This document shows, piece by piece, positions 17,491 to 49,290 of a stretch of DNA of 64,000 nucleotides (its first letter is position 1; each line of letters starts with the position of its first letter). The stretch covers positions 15,872,001 through 15,936,000 of the forward strand of contig OZ287757.1 in the NCBI GenBank assembly GCA_965649765.1, given 5' to 3'. The notes beneath the pieces were generated by a model. It did not search any database. It had not been told where the DNA came from and saw nothing but the letters and a program-made list of their open reading frames with translations. The DNA is from Bispira polyomma. Lineage: Eukaryota. Position numbers and translations under genes: made by a program.

Positions 17491-19365
17491 ATGTATTATA
17501 CAATACATTACAAATTAAACATTGCAATTTGTGTAGTTTTTAATGAGCTAAAAAAAATGAACATACACTATAACTTTTACAAGGTAAAGGTGTGTCAGTT
17601 CATGTATCACACGTGTCCGTTAAAATGCTGTACTTGTTATATATACATTTAAAATTATAATCAAATCAAATAGTCATATAATGCTGATTGTTTTTACTTG
17701 TATGATTACCATCATATCTCTAAAACTATCACAACTAGTACAATGAAAAGTTTCCACATTCATTCCCTCCACATTAAATCTGCCCTAAAACAGACAATGT
17801 CTCCCTAAACTGACGGAATTCCCTTCAAAAGTCCCACAGATGAGGCCCATTTCTGAGGCAAGGCTTTCCATCTAAGAACACCATCCAACATTGTTACGTC
17901 ACCACCTCTAGCACCTGATCTCATTAACACTTGACAAGCTGCCTAATCTGCCAAGGTGTGTCTGTGTATATTGGTGTATGCAGAGAGGTATTAAAGTACT
18001 AACCACTTTTATGTGTGAGGGCTCTGTGCACATATGTCAGATTGTTGTCACATGATGGTGACAGCCCCTTAATACTAATACAGGTGTAATCTTAACAAAA
18101 GGAAGACTGTTGTAAGATTTTGATTTTTTTTTTCTAGAATTTTCTATTCTCCTCCACAGCCTGAATTGTAATTCATAGTATCTATAAAATAGAAAAATAT
18201 AAATAAATCATTGTAAGTAATAACAAGATAATATGTGGTGGCTTACATGCTGTAAGTGAGGTAATATGATATTCATAAAAAGACGTTTGAAAATGGATGA
18301 CGTCACAATACAAGATACGATGGGGGACCTATTGACAGAGGACCACGCCCTTTTTAAGTGGTCATTATTATTATACATTTTAATGTGCTTTATTGATACT
18401 AAGCATCTTCTAAAGCGCAACAACAGAATCAGTGTGTTAATCGTTTAGTCCATAGACACAGCAAATCCTGCCTAACGTAATATACTCCAGTTAAAGTATA
18501 TATGATCTTGTTACCTCAGCCATGAGATGATGGACTAGGGCAAGGCCCCATTATATTTTGGTGGATGGCCCTAATATGTTTTGGTGGATGAGTCAAAATT
18601 CCTGCAGGGTAATGGAAAAAACTAATGAACTAATCTTGACCAAACTTGGTGGAGTGCAATGACATTGGCCTAATTTTGCTAGACCAAATACAAACAGACT
18701 GTTGTAAGATTATAGAAAAGTTTCGAGAAGTAGGCTAAACTAACAGACTCCAGTGAAAAAAAACTAGGTCTAGTTAGGGCTTAGAAAATATTATGTCATG
18801 GGGTCATGTTAGGGGGGGGGGGGCTATGTCAGGGGGGGGGGGGTGCTACGGCCACGTACAGTTGGTGGGTGTAATGGGGTATCAGAAGATGATGACAAAC
18901 CAAAAAAAACAAAAACATTTTGCAGTCCGGTGGTATAACTGTAGAGGTTTTGTCGAGTATTTATTTGATTGACCTTCCACAAGACTTATAATGTATTCCT
19001 AAACTAATATACTCCATCTATAGTAAACTATCACATCATCCACATGTGTTATGTAATACATCCTGTAACAGTTATTTACTGAGGTTTTAAATGCTAACAC
19101 TTACATCTCAGTCTAAAGAGTCATCTCTTATCTGTAACAAAAAGGGGAAAAAGGGAAAAAATTAATTTTTATTTTCCTTATATACATATATACGGCCTTA
19201 GACGTGTATAAGCAAATAGTATCAATGGTGTTTGACAGTGGTGAGAGAGGTTAGGAAGGATTAAATGTCAACCCTGAGAACACAGTATGGTATTAATCTG
19301 TCCCATATTCTTCCTCCTAACTTTGTCCAGATCTCATTATCCACCAACTCTCTCCTCCCCAGCAT

Positions 19366-19620
19366 CCCTAGTCACCCCCACCCTCTCCCTGGTCACCCCC
19401 ACCCTCTCCCTGGTCACCCCCACCCTCTCCATGGTCACCCCTACCCTCTCCCTGGTCACCCCCACCCTCTCCCTAGTCACCCCCACCCTCTCCCTAGTCA
19501 CCCCCACCCTCTCCCTGGTCACCCCCACCCTCTCCCTAGTCACCCCCACCCTCTCCCTGGTCACCCCCACCCTCTCCCTGGTCACCCCCACCCTCTCCCT
19601 AGTCACCCCCACCCCCTCCC
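19366..19620. repeat. 21-bp tandem repeat (CCCTRGTCACCCCCACCCTCT), about 12 copies
   Basis: Direct inspection; it explains the three overlapping low-complexity ORFs. Confidence 0.97.
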
Positions 19621-35374: not shown

Positions 35375-36305
35375 CTATGCCTTTTTGATCTACCAGTACC
35401 TTTTCCATCTATCAGTGTACAATGGTCTGTGTCTTATATGCTATGCATTGTTTGATCTTCTAGTAACTTTTCCATCTATCAGTGTACAATGGTCTATGTC
35501 TTATATCCTATGACTTTTTCATGTACTAGTAGCTTTTACATACCAGTGTGCAATGGTCTATTTCTTATATGCTAAGCCTGTTTGATGTGCTAGTACCTTT
35601 TACATACCAGTGTGCAATGGTCTATTTCTTATATTTAAATATGAATTTGGATATTTAACGTCCAGCCTAGTACCTTTTAGTAAGTTATATTGGGACGGGT
35701 AATTGGAAATGCTGGTGGAAACACTGCATACAGTTGATCAAGGTTCTGCACTGAAACCAGCGGCCCACAGTAATGAACTACTACCTTTCCCACATAGGCA
35801 TCAACGGGATTCAAACTCACGCCACCCAGAGGTGAGAGACCAGTGATTGTGAAGCGCAATGCTTGCTAACTACTAGGTCACCGCGTCCCCTGTACAATGG
35901 TCCATGTCTTATATTCTATGCCTGTTTGATTTACTAGTACACTTTACATACCAGTGTACACTGGTCTGTGTCTTATATTATATGCCTTTTTGATCTACTG
36001 GTAGCTTTTCCATACCAGTGTTCAATGGTCTGTGTCTTATATTGTATGTCTATTTGATCTACTGGTACATTTTACATACCAGTGTTCAGGGTATGTGTCT
36101 TTTATGCGGTTTCTTTTTGATCTACTGGTACTTTTTATATATATCAGTGTACAGTGCACTATGTCTTATCTGCTATGCCTTTTTGATCTATTAGTACCTT
36201 TTACATACCAGTGTGCAATGATCTGTGTCTTATATGCTATGCTTTTTTTATCTATTAGTACCCGTTACATACCTGTTACATACCATTACAGTTCAATGGT
36301 CTATG
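35375..36305. repeat. 64-bp minisatellite, about 10-11 units, split by a SINE
   Basis: CAGTG anchors at 35413, 35480, 35544, 35608, then 35952, 36016, 36080, 36145, 36209. Confidence 0.92.
35635..35890 (-). mobile_element. SINE family A copy inserted in a 64-bp minisatellite
   Basis: Full-length match to 36669-36930; the flanks duplicate about 24 bp of the array unit imperfectly. Confidence 0.9.
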
Positions 36306-36930: not shown

Positions 36931-37259
36931 TTGAAAAACATGGTATGTGTCCTATGTTCTTTTACAGCACAAAACAAAATTTGATATATCTGTATCAAAT
37001 AGTTAAGGATCTGCTTTGCAAAGACTTTGAGCATTGTTTGATATAAAATTAAGTTACCATATAAATGGTAATATAAAATTAATATCTATGTGTTTTGGGG
37101 AGCTACCAAGTGCTAAAGTAACAGCATACCATTGTATCCGGGCATATGTCATTGGTGTTGGCGTTTTAGGTAAACAAGTCAGAATGCTAAAAATTGTATC
37201 GGACAAGTTTATTTGTATGGTCCAATGTGAGCACAAATAAAAAGGAAATAATATCAATA

Positions 37260-38766
37260 TATCATTCAATAAATATTTTTATTTACAATTTTTACATTAT
37301 ATGTACTTTTGATTTTCATTTGTATAACAAACATATAAAACACATAATGTTAAAAACAACAAAAACAATGTTTAAATGCTGAGACTAAGTCCAATTAAGC
37401 TTGATTTGACTTAGTGTGGGACTTTGAATCATATTAATTAACACTTATACATGCAACTCAGACCCCAATTATCACTGGGTAACCCTTTTTATGACTGTCC
37501 TGCCTTTCCCATAAAAAACATACATAGACCACAATAAAACTAATATTCAATTAAACTTTATATAAGCACTGATTACTTTACTATGACTTTTGAACACATT
37601 TGTGTTGTTTTATCAGCATCTTAGGGCAGGTATGCTGGACTCAGTATCCCTCAACTAGTTCACCTGTTTCACAGTGTTTTTGCGGAAACAACCAGTGCAC
37701 AAAAGGTGATTGTTTTACTTGACATATATTATGTTTTAGTTTGGTCTTTTCAAAATACCAGATCAAACACTGAAGCATTTCGTCCATTGAACAAGTTATG
37801 TTCTGAATTCAATCTCACCAAAAATATATGGTAAGATCTGTAGTTTGTAGATAGCTTATTATTTTCACATACATCAGATACTCTTACCTATAATCTCCAA
37901 CCTCTCACTTAGGTTTAACACATATATACTATGTATAGAATGTTGAAATCACTGGAAATACTTAAAACAAATCAAAAGGCACTGAAATGGTTGCAATGGA
38001 CATAATAATGGACTTCTCATAAAAACTAATATAGCATTGTCTGCATGAAGATATTCTAATTAGGCAAGGTACATCAAAATTTTAAAAAGTAAGACAATGC
38101 TGTACTAAAACTGTCGTTAATTTAAGCTCTAACTTGTGGCTAACTACTTTTCAAAGGTTTAGGGAATTGATGAGTTACATATAACCTGGTTACAACATCA
38201 ACCAGTAACAACAAGCAGTTAATATCACTTATTAGATATGTGTACTGCACTTGGAGATTTCTACATGTTGTTCATTGAATCCCTTCCCAGATACAAAACA
38301 TCTGACTAGTAGGTGGTTACATAAACCAGTACTTTAGCAATAACACATGATACTTTTTTAGAAACAACAACATATATATAAATGAAGACACAAGTACTTT
38401 TCATAATTGAACGGCGACATGTACATTTTTGTGTGGTATTTTTGATAATACATGTTTACAATATCAAACAGCAAGGCAGTGACGTCAGCTATGGGTTGTT
38501 GTACTCTCCAACAAACGTACTAAGATAATTACAAAGGTTACTGTATTATTAAAATTATTATTAAAAGCCCTTTGTTGTGCTTGAAATTAACGGATACCAG
38601 CTGACGTGTTTTACACAAATATCTACCCAAGCACTGTATTCATACATAGAGTCAGCAATTGACGCAATGCCTTTTCAAAAGCAAATATGATTCCATGGAC
38701 GTTTGTAAAAGTGGGCATCTTATTTTGGTCAACGAAGGATCTAACATAAATAAGAAAGACTATATA
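37260..38766 (-). other. Probable Zic 3'UTR with polyadenylation signal
   Basis: Stretch free of recognisable repeats after the stop. AATAAA on the minus strand at 37283-37278 is followed by a U-rich tract; SINEs resume just beyond it. Confidence 0.5.
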
Positions 38767-39440: not shown

Positions 39441-42400
39441 CTACAACACAGAGATGGATGGGTGAGTGGAATATAATCAATACTACTCCATATGTAATAC
39501 AATCCTATTTACTGGATTTGACAAGAGAATATGGTACATTATTTAAAAATTCTGTTATAAAGTAAACCAATATTAACATAAAAATATATTAATTTATTTT
39601 TATATATTTTAATTTTATTGCATAGTCCTCACTATTGTATTAAATACTATCAGATATTTTATTTATAATGGTATATTGTTGAAAACCTCACATTTATTTA
39701 TTTAATTATCTTTAATTGATTAAATTGTGAACCAAAGTTTTAATGTAACACTATATATTCATATTATTAATATTTTTTTACTTTCTTAGAAAAAAAACCT
39801 AGTAATTTTGTTAAATAATATTCGGAAATCGGTAACTATAGAAATGTCACATTTTAGTTCAAACTTTCCTTATTTCTACTTGAGTCGGGTTTTTTTTTTA
39901 TTGGATCTAGACTTTTCTTGTGGTATTGAAAATCACTTGTGTGTGTTAAGAACATCTGCTGTTTTTGTCAACCAGTAAAGACAAGTTTTATGTGTATTAT
40001 CCTTTTATTAATGACATTCCCAGATTTTTTTTCTACTCCATTAATAAAGTTGACAGATAACCACAACGTGTCCAAACCAATGACCCATTCTTCCTTTATG
40101 ATGAGGCTTAATCGTTGTCTTAGTCAACCACTTAAATGTTTAAGTATTTTTCTTATGTAGTTTAAGTCTGAATTGTAAAAATTGTTAAGAAAAAATGGGC
40201 ATCTTTGATTTAATTAGGTACTAAATAAAAAAATTACAAATATTAATAATTTTGGCAAGTAAACATGATCTTAATAATTGTCATTTTATGTTTATCATTG
40301 CAGTAATAACTTAATATATCTGTCTTCCTTATCACAGACTTAATGTAAAGACCAGTGAAGCCCTTAGAGTGTGCACAGAGCATTAGGTGAAATGAGCCAA
40401 AACAGCAAGGTGACAGCTTCTGTTTAAAGCCTTGTGTTAATTGTAGTGTGTTGTCAGAGAATCCCTCACACAGAAAAAAGCAAGCAGAAGCTAAGTTTGC
40501 TCCCCGACAGTGGGGACACAAGGCAGATATCCTAATCATGAGCAGGACGGGGTCATTTGGACTGTGTGTGAGGGGGGAAGACTGTTTGTGAGAGAAAGCT
40601 ATGGGTTTTGGAATATTTTTAATAAAGCATATGATCTCAGTGTTATATTTATAATGTTAGGAATATTGACTTTCTATGTGGAGTATTTTACAAAAATGTA
40701 TTAGTTAAAGTCACTAGTGACCAGCTCTTACTTATCCTTAACCTTATAAAAAAACTCTCCAATTAGTGTAGCATACAAAAAAAGTTTACTAGTGACAGTG
40801 ACCATTTTAGCTAATAAAACTTACTGGCAGCAAAGAATTACTTACAACTAACCTTTATAACACCCATCAGACCAGTAAGTCAGATATGACCAGTTTAAAT
40901 TACTAATGACAGCCTATTACTTACTCCTAACCTTATAAAAGCCACAAATAGTTCATCAGATAAAGCCAGTTTAACTTACCAGTGATATATTTTACTTACT
41001 CTAAACCACATAAAGCCCACAACCAGCCCAAGCAGACCAGGACCCCATAGCCACCGACTGCCCCTCGTGGTGTCTCCCCTACCCCTGCCTCGCCCCACAC
41101 ACGGGGGGCAGATGTGGTTGTATTGAGCCCGACCCTGTGGGGGCACACCCTTCTCTTAGCCCCACACCACGACCCCGAGTATCCCTTGTTTTATTTCAGC
41201 CACCCCTACCCCCCACCCGTCCCGAGTTTAATGCACTGATTTCCTCTCCACCCAACCCCCTGTATTAAAGGCATATGCCTGGGCCCTGGTTTTACATTTC
41301 ATTTTGTAGCAAATTTGCATTTCATTGTGTTACAAATTGTCAAACAACTGTTGAATTGAGCTGAGTGTTGTTTTTTTTTTTTCTTGGTGTAGTTTTAGCC
41401 TTAATGGAGAACTGTCAGAATTTATACTCAGAGTTATAAAGAGATTGTGCTGTACAAGTGTAGGGAAAGTAGACCTACTCACACACTCAGTGGGGGATGG
41501 GGAGACTTGACACCAGAAAGAGTCAGCAAAAATATCATATTATCGCCCACCTAAAAAAGGGGGGCTCAGCGAATACTCTCAGATAATACAAGGCACAATA
41601 ATAGGTATATCTAGTAGTGCAAGATTATAAAATGTTTAATAAAATAGTCTCAATATTACAATAACTAACCTAGACATAAACAGAAAAGTGATGTTATCCC
41701 CCACCTAAACCATAGGTTAGCTCCTACAATGGAATTATCTCAAATATTACAATGTCTAAATCCAGTATTGTCACTTTGTCATATGTATTTACGGTTAAAC
41801 TGTTTTCATACATTTATTCAAAATAATACCTTAAAAATATTTTGTGACTATCTAGTAATTCACCAAAGAATAGCTCATTAGCAAAGCATCATTTTAAATT
41901 TAACGTGTTTTATTCCAGTATATAACTGTAAAATCATATTATAGATCTTCAGTAACTTGGTTGGATAAATGTCTTACAACAATGAGGTAAATTTTATTTT
42001 CAATACTATTTTTCCACACAACAAGTAAACAATTACAGATACATGTAGATTAATTTTATAATATCACTCTGTAAAGACCTTTCTGTGTAATATTTTATTT
42101 ATAAAAAGCAGAGTATTTTCAGTACACTGTTTGCTCTGAAATCTGTAAATCAGAAGTCTGTGATTACTATCCAGCTAACAGCATTTGTTTACAGTAGTGT
42201 GGTAATATTATGTACCAGACAAGGAGATCCAGTCAGTACATGATTAGTCTGCAGTCCCTCCAGTGGGCCTGCTGTGAATGGCTGATTTTTGGTACTATAT
42301 TGAGACTACAATGAATAATTTAGGAAGTCAGGCTGGCATATGTGTGATGTTGATGTACCAAGATATACCGTGGAACAGGACATTTCAGCTCATTCACTAA

Positions 42401-42944
42401 ATTCACTAATTTACTATTTTTCAATGAATTTACTAAAAATAATTTTCACATTGAGCAGTTGTTTTAGTTAATAAAATTTATACAAAATTCAATTTTTCCT
42501 TTCTCTGGGAATTTAATTTTCACTATGCAAATTTATCCCTCGTGAACTTTTTGATAGACCTTTCCATATATTTGTTGATTCTTATTAAAACTAGCAATCC
42601 CTTTAATAGTCCTACATTTAATATAAAAACCATTCTATACTTCATCCCTTATACATAGGTTTTCTTGTAGTCTCTCAAACACCAGCCCAGTACCGTGTAG
42701 GGTTAATAAATGTCAGCAAGCCCTTGTTATTGATGGTGCTGGAGACTCACCCTTTGACCTTGGCCTTTTCTCATTCCACCATACACAACCACACACCATT
42801 GAAGGGCTTTCTTCCCTATTTACACCTTGTAAAGTCTATTTATCTGATGTGATTCACGAAGTCTCCATATACAAAAAGACAATTATAACAAAAAAAAATT
42901 CTCTTAGAACAGTTTTAACTCACTCTAATTAAAATACAGACGAT

Positions 42945-43123
42945 NNNNNNNNNNNNNNNNNNNNNNNNNNNNNNNNNNNNNNNNNNNNNNNNNNNNNNNN
43001 NNNNNNNNNNNNNNNNNNNNNNNNNNNNNNNNNNNNNNNNNNNNNNNNNNNNNNNNNNNNNNNNNNNNNNNNNNNNNNNNNNNNNNNNNNNNNNNNNNNN
43101 NNNNNNNNNNNNNNNNNNNNNNN
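42945..43123. other. Assembly gap (179 N) inside the Zic intron
   Basis: Run of N. Confidence 0.99.
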
Positions 43124-46100
43124 TAAAATGCAAAAATTTCTTACTCTAACCTCTGTGTGTTTTTTTGGTGATTATTTAGATGGACATTCAAAAATGTAAC
43201 TCTAATTGATCATTTTTAAACTTGACACATTTCTCCAATTATGATAAACCAGGTTACAATAGTTAAATACACAGTCTACATCCAAAGTAATACTAGGTTC
43301 CATCCTCAATATTTGTAATTTTATCATTAACGACATATCCATAAATTTAATGAAGTATGTTTGTTTCCATTCCTTCAATGGTAAAAGGTAAGTTTCTTCC
43401 TTTAAAACTATTTCCAGCAAATTTGTGAAAGTGTGGTTTGAATGTGACAGTATATTTACAGGATACATGACGAGATTAATAATGTGTTGCTTTATTATTA
43501 ATTATTTAAGACCTTTAGTTCATTATCTGAGAAGGTCATGTACATTTATGTATCCGTTCTAGCTTTAAACCGATTAGACTTGCTGAAAACTCGTAGTTTG
43601 CAGAGCCCAAAAATACTTGGTCAACTTCCCTGTTCTAAATTTCCTGTTGTGATGTGTGGAAAGTGACGTTAAACTTAAAACTGACGTTTGATACCAGTAT
43701 GTATCAGACCTACAATCTCTGGACACACACACACATTTTCTAGAACCCTTGTCAATCATTTTTTCTCACCCTGTACACGAATAATGTGAAAACCCGGAAG
43801 AATCCTTATATTATCGCCCCCATTGTCCCGTCATCATCCTCTGGTTTTCTATCCATCCCCTAGAGCCATTGAGTAGTAGTCATGTAGTTGTGGTTCTCTA
43901 TATAATCTCCTCATTACCCACACATTAGCCCAATGTTTGTAAACATTAAGACAAGGGGGCAGAGAGACTAGCTCAAGTGTGTATAAATGAAATGAATGGT
44001 GGGGGAGGGGAGAGTTAGCTTTAGTGGTCCCCCCGCCACAAGGGAACAATTAACAAATCCGGGGAGCTTATCCAATTGAGACAAATTGGTTTAGACAGTT
44101 CTGTTTGGTTTACGCCTTGCTAACAATAACACAGCAAAATGATGATAAGGAGATTTGGGAGAGAATATGCTACCCAGAATGCACCACAAGAAGAAACAGT
44201 AGCTCAGGTGTACATTATATATTGATGTTTTAAAAGTACACTGACGTTTAAACCAAGTTCCTACTCACTACTAATACACACACTCACAGATTTGTTATTA
44301 TGATATTCTGTGTATAAACTGTTGTGTCTCACTGTATAAACAACTGGCTGGGTTTAATCATGCACTGTTGTTTTTGTTGAATGAGGAAATAGTAGTTGGA
44401 CTACGATGTTGGTAGTAACAACTAGTTGACTGCCATAACATTGCATTGTATACACACACATAGAACTTCTTGAAAGTGAATACAGGAGAAAAGCCCTCAT
44501 GGAGAAAAAAACTCTTTAGAGAAAAAGTCCTGGATTTGCATATATGAACAAAAGCCTATAGCTTTCTCTAGTAGCTGAAAATAATCCCTCAGTCAGTTAT
44601 AACGAAAAGAAAATCAGCCCTCAATTATTTTTCATTTTAATTTCATATAATCCTATTTTCTTTTCATATACTGTTGTTGCGGACTATCATATCAATAATC
44701 TATGAAAGGAATAACATGCCTTTAATAGTATTCAAGATGGTCTACTCCAGTAAAAGTGATCTAAGAAAATCTCAAGTAACAAACACAAAATTTAACAAGT
44801 GATTTCATGGCTTTTCACCAAAACTAATTTAGGGGTTTCTCCAAAGGCTGTCAAAAGTTGGGCATGGATTACAATTTTTCAAAGGGCTATTCTCCTAAGG
44901 GCCTTTTCCATGAGAGCTTTTGTCCATCTACCCAGAAGAGTACCTGCCGTCCCTTTGTTATGTTTTTGTAGGTTTACCATGCAGGATATCCAAGTCTTTG
45001 CACAGTGACACGTTAAGATAAATACTAGTGTTTAACAAGTTACAGATTTGTAGAGTTTATATAGTAGATGTCATTGAGGTCTGGTTAAATCCCCTCGGGG
45101 GTAGAATCCTGATCCACTGGGGGTATATAAGTTTTAACTGTTACAACATACAATTGTAAGCACGTCAGCTCCCAAACCAGGTAAACTCAGTAGTTAATAC
45201 AAGTAGTCAAGTGTTACATAGATAGACTGTGAAAATTTACTAATTTTAAGATATTCACTGTCATTAATTTTCACTGTTGGCCATTTTTTAGTTTAATTGT
45301 CAATATTAGTTTAAATATTTCACTGAAAATTTCGTTTGTTTCAGTATAACAAAAAAAAAACTTTATTAAAAATATTGTTTATGAATTTTGAATTAATGAG
45401 ATTCAATTGTACTTGTATAATATTATAAACACATTTTTTAAATGTAACAAAAGTGATAAAATTCTGTGTAATGCTACATTTTTTATATCTTACTCGCCTT
45501 TCCTTTAACTGTGATAAGCTTAATTAAAATTACTGTCAAATAATTCCTGTACCTAATAACAAATAGTCTTCATAGTGTGTCTTTTGTGTCATATTTAACT
45601 GATATGGAGTCCCCTCCCTTCTTTCCATTTAGAGCATAATTACAAGCATATTAAAGTTCAATTAAAAGAGACACCAGGTCCATTTAGACAGTGAGTGAAT
45701 ACAGGTGATTAGATTGCTGGTCACTAATGGTCTCTATATGTACAGGTCATCTCCTAGACCCACCCCTGAGAGGCTTGACAACTACTTCCTGTGGAAGCCA
45801 CCCAACCCCTTACCTCCCAAACCCCCACCCCAACACCTCAGATACATTAACTTCCTCAAACCAACGGCTTCTCTTAAACCACTCAACCGCTCAGATTTTA
45901 TCATAGTTCTCCTAAACTGTAAATCTATTTTAACAAGTTTGCAAATTGTAGGGCCGTCCAAATAGTTATTGGCCTCTATTAGTAAGGGTGTCAAACTTCA
46001 CATCCAGACAGTAAATAGGGCATACTTTCTTCCCCTCCCCCTCACTCAAATTAACCCTCCTATTTAATATCAAGCAAAATAAACTACAGAGCCCTTCCAC

Positions 46101-47175
46101 CAAATATATAACTACTGCCCACATCTTACGAGTATAGAAAATCATCTGGTAGGTTGGTAAGGTCTGTCTTATGAAGAGATAAAAGAACTTTAGGCTGATT
46201 GTCAGTGACATAACCTAATTACATACTCAGTTAAACCTGTAATATGAAGTAGTTTTGTTTACTAAACAGTCCATTTACTTTTTTGTTCTTCCAGGATTTT
46301 ATGGGCCAGTAGGTTCTAGTGTGTGTGTATGTGTGTGTAATTCTAGGGATTATTATGTGTGATATGAGAGATTATGTAGTGGTAAAGAGAATATCTCTAT
46401 ATAATAAAGACTGGACCTTCCACCCCCCCTCTCTCTAATGATGTACCAGGGGAGGACCATTAAATATCTGAGGAGGAAAGGGGTAATTTGTGTTTTGAAC
46501 ACATGTACCAACCTCTACACAATAACAATTTTCTGGTCTTTTACCCCAATCAATAGAGGCAGGGATTAAGACCGCCTGTTGACCGACATGTTTGGGGAGG
46601 TTTAGTCAATGATAAAGTGCAATGGAGAATTGTGGAGTCTTTCTAAATCCACCGATAATCTCATTTTAATTGTGAGGTTTGAAAAATATCAAAAGACAAA
46701 CAAACAATTGATGTTTGGTGTCTGTATAGGTCACGAGATTTTTTGATTTTTTTGCTGTTTGTGATAAGGGTCTTGTTATGTTTCAAAATCTGTTTGAATT
46801 AAAGCAATAGGTTTACATGCAGTGACAAATAGTATTGAAGATTTTTAATGAAAGCAAAACCCTTCTGTTGGCAGAAGTCATGATGATTTGCAAAAGGTAT
46901 GTTTAGCTAGATTTGAATCATTGGAGCCTCAATATATTTAAATTATCTCATCTATTCCGAGAAATTTGACAGAAAGATGGGTAATTAAAATGTTATACTA
47001 GAAAGGTGTCTGGTTCTACAGGTGTACAGGGAACTGTCCACCAGATAAACTGCACACCGCCCATATTATGCCAAGGTAAACTGCCCATTATCAGGTAAAC
47101 TGCTGACCACACAAATTTACTGTGGAGGAAAACTGCCCATCAATAGCAACTACAGAATTTTCATAGTTTGAACCA

Positions 47176-47380
47176 ACCTCTGCGTCCTCTTGTGTACATT
47201 TTTATTTATTTATTTACTATTTACACATGTTATTTATTTGCACCCACCTGTGTGTGTTCTCTTATGCACCATCAGTGAATGTTGTACTATTGGCTCTATA
47301 GAGTATGACATATATTGTATATGTAACCTGTATGTGTTGTCTTATGTATCTTGGGTGAATGATATTTTCCGGCTCTATAG
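47176..47380 (-). repeat. Three degenerate tandem copies of the ZF3 3' end plus splice donor (possible micro-exons)
   Basis: Copies end at 47328, 47248 and 47178, each followed by GT. They read KIHKTTHTG, LMVHKRTHTG and VHKRTQ. The first two are preceded by ATACTCTATAG. Confidence 0.8.
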
Positions 47381-47419
47381 AGTATATAACATGTTAAAAT
47401 AGATCCACATGTAACTGAC

Positions 47420-48245
47420 CTGTATGTGTTCTCTTGTGTATCTTGAGGTTTTCACTCCTGGCAAACACCTTCCCACATCCAGGGAAGGGACAAGGGAAAG
47501 GCTTCTCTCCGGTGTGGACACGGATGTGGTTCACCAGCTTGTACTTGGCTTTGAAGGGCTTCAGTTCCCTCTCACAGTCCTTCCAGTAACAGGTATGGTC
47601 AGTCTGCTCTGGACCCCCTACATGTTCTACAGTCAGATGGGTGACCACTTCATGCATGGAGTAGAAGGTCTTGTTACAGGGCTTCTTTGGTTCTGGTTGA
47701 TGTTGGTCAATCCAGAGACAGGTATGTTCTTGCTTGACGGGGTGCCGCATATACCTGAAGAAGGAGCTTGGTCCATGGGGGCCTGCAGTCAGAGCCATGT
47801 GATTGAGGGCTCCAGACGAGCTCAGAGGATGGCTGTTGAAGTTGTGCATGGCGTGGGTGAAGTCTGAGGCATGGTTAGCCATGGGGGTCAGATGGTCGGT
47901 CCGTGGGTAAAAACTGCTGTCTGTCCCTGGAAACCGGAGCTGACTGTTCATGTGGGACATGGCGGCAGAATGTTGTGTTGGATCTGTGAGTCCCGCAAAA
48001 GAGGCCTGTCCATAGGCTGAACTATGGAGGCTACTTGATCCAGACACATAGTCTGTACTACGGAGTAGCCCCAGATCCCTGCTACTGTAGCTGCCAACCC
48101 CGGGCATACTGTAACCGTTGGTCTGCATCCCAAAGTGACTACTCTGTCCAGTGGTGCCTAACTCCCCCATAGGATGGTTAGGACTGAGCTTGAGGTGGCT
48201 GGCTGTTAGACTACTACCTGTGTCCATAAAGGGACTAATCATCAT
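47420..48245 (-). CDS. Zic: Zic family zinc-finger transcription factor, coding exon 1 (N-terminus, degenerate ZOC, ZF-NC, ZF1-ZF3)
   Basis: The translation contains [12 protein letters not shown] (ZF-NC), CLWID..C..H...EH and [20 protein letters not shown] (Trp-containing ZF1/ZF2), and [25 protein letters not shown], all diagnostic of Zic/opa. First ATG is 48245-48243 (MMISPF); the ORF-track start at 48281 is a TTG. The exon ends at a phase-1 donor G|GTCAGT (47420/47419). 826 nt = 275 codons + 1. Confidence 0.96.
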
Positions 48246-48875
48246 TACTAACACACAACCACACAGTCTGATACCACACAAATCTCTGGATGATTCTATA
48301 GACTCTCTCTATACAAAATTACCTCATGTCAGAACACCTCCAGTATTTTAGTGTATCTTATATATTAAAAATATATACACCAATGATGAACTACAACATT
48401 TACAATCCCTGCAATTTTAACAAAAGTTTATTACAAAACAGTTTTACTGTAATTGTCTCTTTTGTTACTTTGACACCTTTATTTTTAGATTTATATATTT
48501 ATTTTTCTTTTCTCATGTCTTACTATTTCCTTCTGCGAAACTGCTTCACAATCTTGCAATATCAACACTGCTATCAGTGTATCCCTCCAGGGAATAATTA
48601 TAGGTCTTTTTGATAAAGTTTTTCCCCAAAAAAAGAAAATCAAAAATTGCATACACATATACACCAGTGTTGTTTGTATACAGATATAATCTCTATATCT
48701 ATAAAGTTTGATCAAAACCCGGAGTGTTTATCCTGACTATACTGTCGTGCTAAGTTCCTGCCAGGCTTGCCGTGGTTCTATCTGATAGGAGTAGAAAAGC
48801 CCACTCAGTATGATCCAAGTAGGGTCTGAAAACCTCCCCCTCTGATCAACTCCACAAGACAGACAGTGAGAAAGC

Positions 48876-48912
48876 AACTGATCCAATCCCCCCAGTGGAG
48901 CTGTACTTTATA
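48876..48912 (-). promoter_or_regulatory. Putative Zic core promoter: TATA box plus initiator
   Basis: Minus strand TATAAAG at 48912-48906 and Inr TCAGTT at 48881-48876 (A+1 = 48879, 33 nt from the first T of TATA). Implies a leader of about 630 nt. Confidence 0.6.
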
Positions 48913-49074
48913 AAACTCGGTGGAGAGGACAGTGGAGGAGAACATAGACAAGGGACAGCCTTTTCTCACAAACCTATACTAGCACAGACTTAGGGTCCCT
49001 CTCCTCTCCATCATTAAACACACAGAGAGGTGGGAGGGGCGACTTGTTGCTTTCCAAAGCAAAGCATTTGCAAC

Positions 49075-49290
49075 AGGACCCAGCTGGATATCGCGAGATT
49101 GGGCCAATTACGTGACTTAGGCGAGACGTGTCAATAACCCGCGCTACGGGATAGAGCAGCGTCTTTGCCGCAATCTGATTGGCTGACTACAAGTCGCTGA
49201 TGTCAAAAAGCAGTGGTGACTGGCGACGGTTGGTGTGTCTTTTGGTTTGCTGTTTTTACATATCACACTGTCTTTTCCCTCGGGATCTAT
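49075..49290 (-). promoter_or_regulatory. CpG-rich proximal promoter with CCAAT boxes
   Basis: Local CpG excess; back-to-back GATTGG/CCAAT around 49097-49108; CTGATTGGCT (NF-Y consensus) near 49175; TCGCGAGA; TTACGTGA; COE-type TCCCTCGGGA at 49276-49285. Confidence 0.55.

What the first reader, a model, noticed from the sequence alone, without database searches (positions are those of the whole stretch)
47176..47420. Stack of duplicated 'HKRTHTG|GT' modules inside the Zic intron, including an in-frame 48-nt candidate cassette exon in the ZF3-ZF4 linker
Seen: after the true donor (47420), three further copies of the exon end follow at 47328, 47248 and 47178, each still followed by GT (GTTACA, GTGGGT, GTTGGT). 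Copy 47295-47248 is flanked by CTCTATAG and GTGGGT, is exactly 48 nt and phase 1-1, and lies 124 nt from the main donor. Inclusion would give ..HKRTHT-EPIVQHSLMVHKRTHT-GEKPF (+16 aa, no stop). Copy 47374-47328 has the same acceptor but is 47 nt (frameshift) and only 45 nt from the donor. Changes relative to the real exon are largely synonymous or conservative (CTC>CTG, CAC>CAT, CAT>CAC, AGA>AGG, ACA>ACG, Ile>Val). This hints at coding constraint, but the counts are small. Established: inserting residues into a TGEKP linker weakens DNA binding, as in the WT1 +KTS isoform between its ZF3 and ZF4. Inference: this may be a splice switch producing a linker-extended Zic. Alternatively the copies act as downstream donors that read into the in-frame TAA at 47396-47394 (three-finger protein or NMD), or they are neutral decoys. 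The polypyrimidine tract is weak. I know of no such structure in Zic genes but cannot search.
Basis: partly seen in the sequence, partly recalled or inferred. Interest (0 to 1): 0.85.

Follow-up and report, generated by a model that had tools for sequence, protein, structure and literature searches.

The report
Decaying exon-end repeats in Zic intron
The end of a Zic exon and the start of its intron were duplicated a few times in this animal's lineage, leaving decaying spare splice sites that are most likely unused; one copy could in principle be spliced in, but no RNA evidence could be obtained.

Summary
Three degenerate units (92, 80, 70 nt; 52-73% alike) follow the donor of the conserved Zic A-intron; each ends in a copy of the exon end plus GT. 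Copy B would be a 48-nt in-frame, stop-free exon. New evidence: (1) a tandem paralog 70 kb away carries a homologous two-unit array, and there the counterpart of copy B has an in-frame stop and has lost CAG before GT. (2) The last 48 codons of exon 1 are homogenised between the paralogs in this species and in a relative (gene conversion). (3) Neither ortholog in the relative, nor 38 other Zic introns, has such copies. (4) The synonymous excess is not significant once changes in the real exon are counted (P 0.11-0.13), and K>M, L>P, R>T, H>Q were left out. (5) Copy B's donor scores strong, its acceptor weak, and the 124-nt intron is shorter than all 29 sampled from this genome (shortest 225). 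Best reading: a lineage-specific, decaying junction-spanning tandem repeat with mostly silent pseudo-donors, working like human F7 intron 7.

The parts
47420..48245 (-). Zic-A coding exon 1 (ATG at 48245; ZF1-ZF3), ending in phase 1 in the ZF3-ZF4 linker
   Evidence: zf_ZIC 4.4e-23; 84% nucleotide and 92% protein identity to the relative's ortholog
47421..47564 (-). Last 48 codons of exon 1, homogenised with the tandem paralog Zic-B (gene-conversion tract)
   Evidence: synonymous differences 4/46 here against 19/36 upstream, P 1.4e-5; 3/47 against 16/36 in the relative
47328..47419 (-). Repeat unit 1 (92 nt): true donor GTCAGT, in-frame TAA 47396-47394, AG at 47375, copy A of the exon end (47-nt pseudo-exon, frameshifting; next donor GTTACA weak)
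47248..47327 (-). Repeat unit 2 (80 nt), 73% like unit 1; holds the 48-nt candidate exon
47248..47295 (-). Copy B: 48-nt in-frame, stop-free candidate exon; weak acceptor (2.7 bits), strong donor CAG|GTGGGT (10.5 bits); use not shown
47178..47247 (-). Repeat unit 3 (70 nt), most decayed; 71% like the second unit of the Zic-B array; ends in copy C
39441..47419 (-). A-intron (7979 nt), colinear with the relative's intron through conserved non-coding blocks that begin only at 46696
   Evidence: A-intron position from PMC2222250
38767..39440 (-). Zic-A coding exon 2 (ZF4-ZF5 and C-terminus)

Best explanation
A 70-90 nt segment made of the exon-1 tail, its donor and the first part of the intron was duplicated in tandem in this lineage (shown: units and homology; inferred: timing after the split from the relative). 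The two tandem Zic paralogs exchange DNA by gene conversion over the end of exon 1 (shown in both species). One such tract ran into the intron, so both genes came to carry the array (inferred; direction unknown). Zic-A later gained one more unit (units 1 and 2 are each other's closest match). Since then the units have decayed by substitutions and indels. The most upstream donor, attached to the intact exon, is used; the downstream GT sites are pseudo-donors with little or no use and no selected function (inferred by analogy with F7 intron 7; not shown here).
For: Unit alignment 52-73% with many indels. The Zic-B intron start matches the stack at 91 against a maximum of 52 in 694 tiles, and cross-validated HMMs find each array from the other (11.3 and 8.8 bits against decoy maxima 3.7 and 2.6). 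Counterpart of copy B in Zic-B: 39 nt, in-frame TAA, CAT|GT. Conversion: 9 species-grouping sites in the last 170 nt, and none supporting orthology in the last 150 nt, against 23 orthology sites upstream; Fisher P 1.4e-5 and 5e-5. Absent in both orthologs of the relative (HMM -1.5 bits or less) and in 38 other Zic A-introns (best score 18). Synonymous excess P 0.11-0.13. Acceptor weaker than 24 of 29 real ones; 124-nt intron shorter than all 29 sampled. Precedent PMC1557585.
Against: Copy B's donor is among the 3 best GT sites of 466 in the intron, and copy B is the only in-frame open pseudo-exon of its strength in four Zic introns. The relative's real donor is CAG|GTGGGC, so this donor type works here. 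The 15 nt around the acceptor are identical in units 1 and 2, more than the 73% average. Only one close relative was available. The splice model rests on 29 introns from one gene family. No RNA evidence either way.
Confidence: 0.72

Rival explanations
1. Leaky or regulated unproductive splicing. Copy B's strong donor is sometimes used instead of the true donor (172 nt further on). The transcript then holds the TAA at 47396-47394, 146 nt before the junction, and is degraded by NMD or yields a three-finger protein. This would trim Zic-A dosage.
For: Needs only one site, and it is strong: 10.5 bits against 11.1 for the true donor. All three read-through forms stop at the same TAA.
Against: In the F7 model, downstream pseudo-donors do not compete with the upstream one even when strong (PMC1557585; a mammalian result). 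Not conserved in the relative or the paralog, so a selected role is unlikely.
Confidence: 0.13
2. Copy B is a young cassette exon that is included at a low level without selected function (exonisation in progress).
For: AG and a strong GT flank 48 nt in frame without a stop; best pseudo-exon in four Zic introns.
Against: Weak acceptor with no clear branch-point motif in the 32 nt after copy A's donor (read from the sequence); upstream intron 124 nt against a shortest sampled intron of 225 nt.
Confidence: 0.08
3. Copy B is a regulated, selected cassette that adds 16 residues to the ZF3-ZF4 linker and yields a Zic with weakened DNA binding, convergent on WT1 +KTS.
For: Frame, sites and position fit. 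The HKRTHT part is intact in B. P 0.027 for the synonymous excess if only the copy is assumed to have changed. Identical 15-mer at both acceptors.
Against: P 0.11-0.13 under the fairer model, before correcting for choosing the best of three copies. In frame plus open has about 53% chance for at least one of three units. Dead in the paralog, absent in the relative. None of 56 Zic proteins spanning the linker shows a duplicated-tail insertion (two have other 6-residue changes).
Confidence: 0.07

Closest known systems
Human F7 intron 7 minisatellite (37-bp VNTR spanning the exon 7/intron 7 junction; PMC1557585)
   Same: Tandem units whose first copy spans an exon-intron junction, so the true donor is followed by a row of donor copies.
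   Different: Here the units are 70-92 nt and only 52-73% alike, donors differ, units 1 and 2 also carry an AG and so look like small exons, and the array is shared with a paralog. Silence of the copies was shown for F7 and is untested here.
Tandem (exon) duplication around a splice or proto-splice site (PMC2891723, Drosophila)
   Same: Local duplication of sequence holding AG/GT copies splice signals and can shift gene structure.
   Different: No new or shifted intron is shown here; the A-intron position is unchanged.
WT1 +KTS isoform (PMC5100589, introduction)
   Same: An insertion would fall in the ZF3-ZF4 linker of a C2H2 factor.
   Different: +KTS is a demonstrated 3-residue isoform, made by an alternative donor and conserved across vertebrates (own knowledge). 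Here it would be a 16-residue cassette, with no transcript evidence and no conservation.
ZIC3-B (PMC3157443)
   Same: An alternatively spliced Zic isoform that touches the finger domain.
   Different: It uses a conserved alternative last exon that alters the end of ZF5; it is not a linker insertion.

Membership tests
Zic family gene with A-intron | Five C2H2 fingers with the Zic-type first finger | tested here: met
   PF18366 E 4.4e-23; named hits are overwhelmingly ZIC proteins; ZF4-5 in exon 2
Zic family gene with A-intron | Intron in the middle of the finger domain (ZF3-ZF4 linker, phase 1) | tested here: met
   Same position in 40 other Zic loci; PMC2222250
Junction-spanning minisatellite with pseudo-donors (F7 type) | Head-to-tail units, the first spanning the exon-intron junction | tested here: met
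Junction-spanning minisatellite with pseudo-donors (F7 type) | Near-identical units with identical donors | tested here: not met
   52-73% identity; Tandem Repeats Finder does not report the array. So it works like one but is not filed as a VNTR.
Junction-spanning minisatellite with pseudo-donors (F7 type) | Copy number varies among individuals | not testable with these tools
Junction-spanning minisatellite with pseudo-donors (F7 type) | Downstream donors silent in vivo | not testable with these tools
   no RNA runs could be obtained
Functional alternative cassette exon | AG and GT flanks, frame kept, no stop | tested here: met
Functional alternative cassette exon | Splice sites and intron length in the range of real ones | tested here: inconclusive
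   donor strong; acceptor above only 5 of 29; intron 124 nt against a minimum of 225
Functional alternative cassette exon | Conserved in relatives or under coding constraint | tested here: not met
   absent in the relative, dead in the paralog, constraint not significant; a young exon is not excluded
Functional alternative cassette exon | Inclusion in transcripts | not testable with these tools
Gene conversion between tandem paralogs | A tract where paralogs group by species while flanking sequence groups by orthology | tested here: met

The most novel reading that the evidence does not exclude
Copy B has been recruited as a regulated 48-nt exon that lengthens the ZF3-ZF4 linker of Zic-A by 16 residues: a young, lineage-specific counterpart of WT1 +KTS, built from a duplicated exon end, with a dead sister copy in the paralog as a natural control.
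Probability: 0.07. Interest if true: 0.75.

Novelty: new variant of a known kind. Interest (0 to 1): 0.3.

Why it matters
If neutral, it is a tidy natural case of splice-site duplication at one of the most conserved introns of bilaterians. It offers an invertebrate test of whether the upstream donor wins over a nearly equal one 172 nt downstream. It also records repeated conversion between tandem Zic paralogs, which can mislead orthology calls made from the finger region. If the cassette were really regulated, it would be the first linker-switch isoform in a Zic that I could find, and exon birth caught in progress.

Tried and rejected
I did not try again and could not use read laying. For the same reason I did not search the genome for the repeat unit, so a dispersed-repeat origin is tested only on about 190 kb held locally (no hit below E 0.6). 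No search was made with a joined spliced model; joins were only translated locally. Idea that copy C is the ancestral donor: shared 9-mer with the relative's intron start, but P 0.10, so not claimed. Idea that Zic-A's present donor came from Zic-B: P 0.013 in one of 12 comparisons, not significant after correction. RNA structure masking the copies: z -1.2, nothing special. Mis-assembly: rejected (see observation check). The protein tree did not place the animal, and it dropped the window's own protein through my off-by-one frame slip; the ortholog stood in. Papers: no report found of a Zic linker isoform or Zic paralog conversion; the library is incomplete. Earlier scan notes: none.

Full report
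Setting. The window lies on contig C10 of a 1.035-Gb, 75-contig animal genome. It holds a Zic gene on the minus strand (Zic-A). Exon 1 runs from ATG 48245 to 47420, then comes a 7979-nt intron, and exon 2 runs from 39440 to 38767. The nearest named proteins are mollusc and annelid Zics at about 52-55% identity, so a lophotrochozoan is likely; this is an inference, and the tree did not place the animal. The intron is the A-intron, reported in all 32 bilaterian Zic genes examined (PMC2222250).

Observation. It is confirmed. Copy A (47374-47328) is 47 nt and shifts the frame. Copy B (47295-47248) is 48 nt and would add EPIVQHSLMVHKRTHT without a stop. Reading through to any downstream donor meets TAA at 47396-47394. 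The 27-nt exon tail scores 44 on A and 32 on B against a maximum of 24 in 3080 control tiles; C scores 22 and is borderline alone. The true repeat unit is the whole stretch from one GT to the next: 92, 80 and 70 nt, 52-73% alike, with many indels. That divergence, and the absence of gaps nearby, argue against mis-assembly.

A paralog carries the same array. A second Zic (Zic-B) lies about 70 kb away in the same orientation. The first 200 nt of its A-intron align to the stack with score 91, against a maximum of 52 in 694 real-sequence tiles. An HMM of the Zic-A units alone finds the Zic-B array at 11.3 bits (decoy maximum 3.7), and the reverse gives 8.8 (2.6). Zic-B has two units. The first is 62-65% like units 1 and 2; the second is 71% like unit 3. 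So Zic-A has one extra unit, from a later duplication. The Zic-B counterpart of copy B is 39 nt, reads ELILRA-stop, and ends CAT|GT: it is dead as an exon.

The paralogs exchange DNA here. A related species (ENA ERZ22147071) has both genes on one contig, with colinear introns. In the last 48 codons of exon 1, paralogs within a species differ at 4/46 and 3/47 synonymous positions, against 19/36 and 16/36 in the preceding 55 codons (Fisher P 1.4e-5 and 5e-5). Orthologs differ at 11-12 of 46-47. Informative sites switch from orthology (23 sites upstream) to species grouping (9 in the last 170 nt). Gene conversion over ZF2-ZF3 is therefore shown in both species. A tract running on into the intron is the simplest way for both genes to share the array (inference). 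The arrays are more diverged than the exon tract, so that exchange is older than the latest exon conversions.

The array is lineage-specific. The relative's two introns show no copy (HMM scores -1.5 bits or less). In 38 further distinct Zic A-introns from metagenome contigs the best self-match is 18, against 44 and 24 in this species' two genes (a few contigs gave under 400 nt). One origin after the split is the simplest reading; loss in the relative is not excluded with a single outgroup.

Coding constraint. Over the nine alignable codons, A differs by L>P, R>T and one synonymous change. B differs by K>M, I>V and 3.5 synonymous of 6 changes. C has H>Q and a 2-nt deletion. If only the copy mutates, P is 0.027. 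If the real exon also collects synonymous changes, as it must, P is 0.11-0.13, before allowing for picking the best of three copies. AGG and CAC, cited as synonymous changes, are the states in the relative's real exons, and CAC>CAT is shared with the frameshifted copy A. An in-frame, stop-free unit is expected about 22% of the time, 53% for at least one of three. None of 56 Zic proteins spanning the linker has a duplicated-tail insertion.

Splice signals. I derived 29 introns from this genome's myosin genes. The sample is biased to short introns, yet the shortest is 225 nt; the cassettes need 45 and 124 nt. With matrices from these introns, the donors score 11.1 (true), 4.1 (A), 10.5 (B) and 5.6 (C). 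Acceptor B scores 2.7, above only 5 of 29 real ones and matched by 56 of 442 AGs in the intron; the true acceptor scores 7.1. In fairness, copy B is the only in-frame open pseudo-exon of its strength in the four Zic introns, and 15 nt around the acceptor are identical in units 1 and 2. The strong donor is expected from copying a real one, but it keeps leaky use plausible. The easiest aberrant product is then donor B alone, which carries the early stop.

Mechanism and comparison. The closest described case is human F7 intron 7. There a minisatellite spanning the junction leaves several competent donors and only the most upstream is used (PMC1557585). The Zic array works like that on paper, but fails the 'near-identical units' test and is not filed as a VNTR. 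Duplication of splice signals by tandem duplication is also documented in Drosophila (PMC2891723). WT1 +KTS (PMC5100589) shares only the position; ZIC3-B (PMC3157443) is a different kind of isoform. I found no paper on a Zic linker isoform.

Limits. No search used a joined spliced model. There is one close relative, a 29-intron splice model, and no genome-wide search for the unit.

Verdict. Real and unusual, most likely a decaying lineage-specific duplication with silent or nearly silent pseudo-donors (0.72); unproductive donor use 0.13; low-level unselected inclusion 0.08; regulated linker switch 0.07. Interest 0.3.

Noticed in passing
L004 and L005 (G000:C6:75187227 and 75190875, divergent pair 3.6 kb apart); L006 (G000:C2:52581658): Three further Zic genes lack the A-intron and have continuous open frames of 507, 521 and 432 codons; they form their own long-branched clade. 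Probably retrogene-derived. Many intron-free Zic loci also came up among metagenome contigs (27 distinct), but their organisms are unknown and may be cnidarians or transcripts.
   Followed up: partly
window 47421-47564; L003 1312-1455; L001 and L007 exon-1 ends: Gene conversion between tandem Zic-A and Zic-B over ZF2-ZF3 in two species; it could mislead orthology calls based on the finger region.
   Followed up: yes
window 47043-47140: Four short G-rich direct repeats (15 nt, spacing 19-33) just beyond copy C, absent from the relative's alignment; possibly the relic of an insertion.
   Followed up: partly
window 39931-46696, 48741-49222, 37256-37400: About a dozen conserved non-coding blocks (68-92% identity with the relative) in and around the Zic-A intron; candidate enhancers.
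   Followed up: no
P0002, P0003, P0013 (L011, L012): The next-closest Zic-A relatives (68-72% identity) end their first open frame after KLVNHIR, which suggests an extra intron inside ZF2.
   Followed up: no
window 19337-19620 and 36001-36273: An imperfect 21-nt tandem array that makes repetitive open frames on both strands, and a 64-nt tandem array; ordinary minisatellites.
   Followed up: no
L017, L018, L019 (C11, C8, C13): Near-identical myosin gene copies, introns included, on three chromosomes; recent segmental duplication.
   Followed up: no
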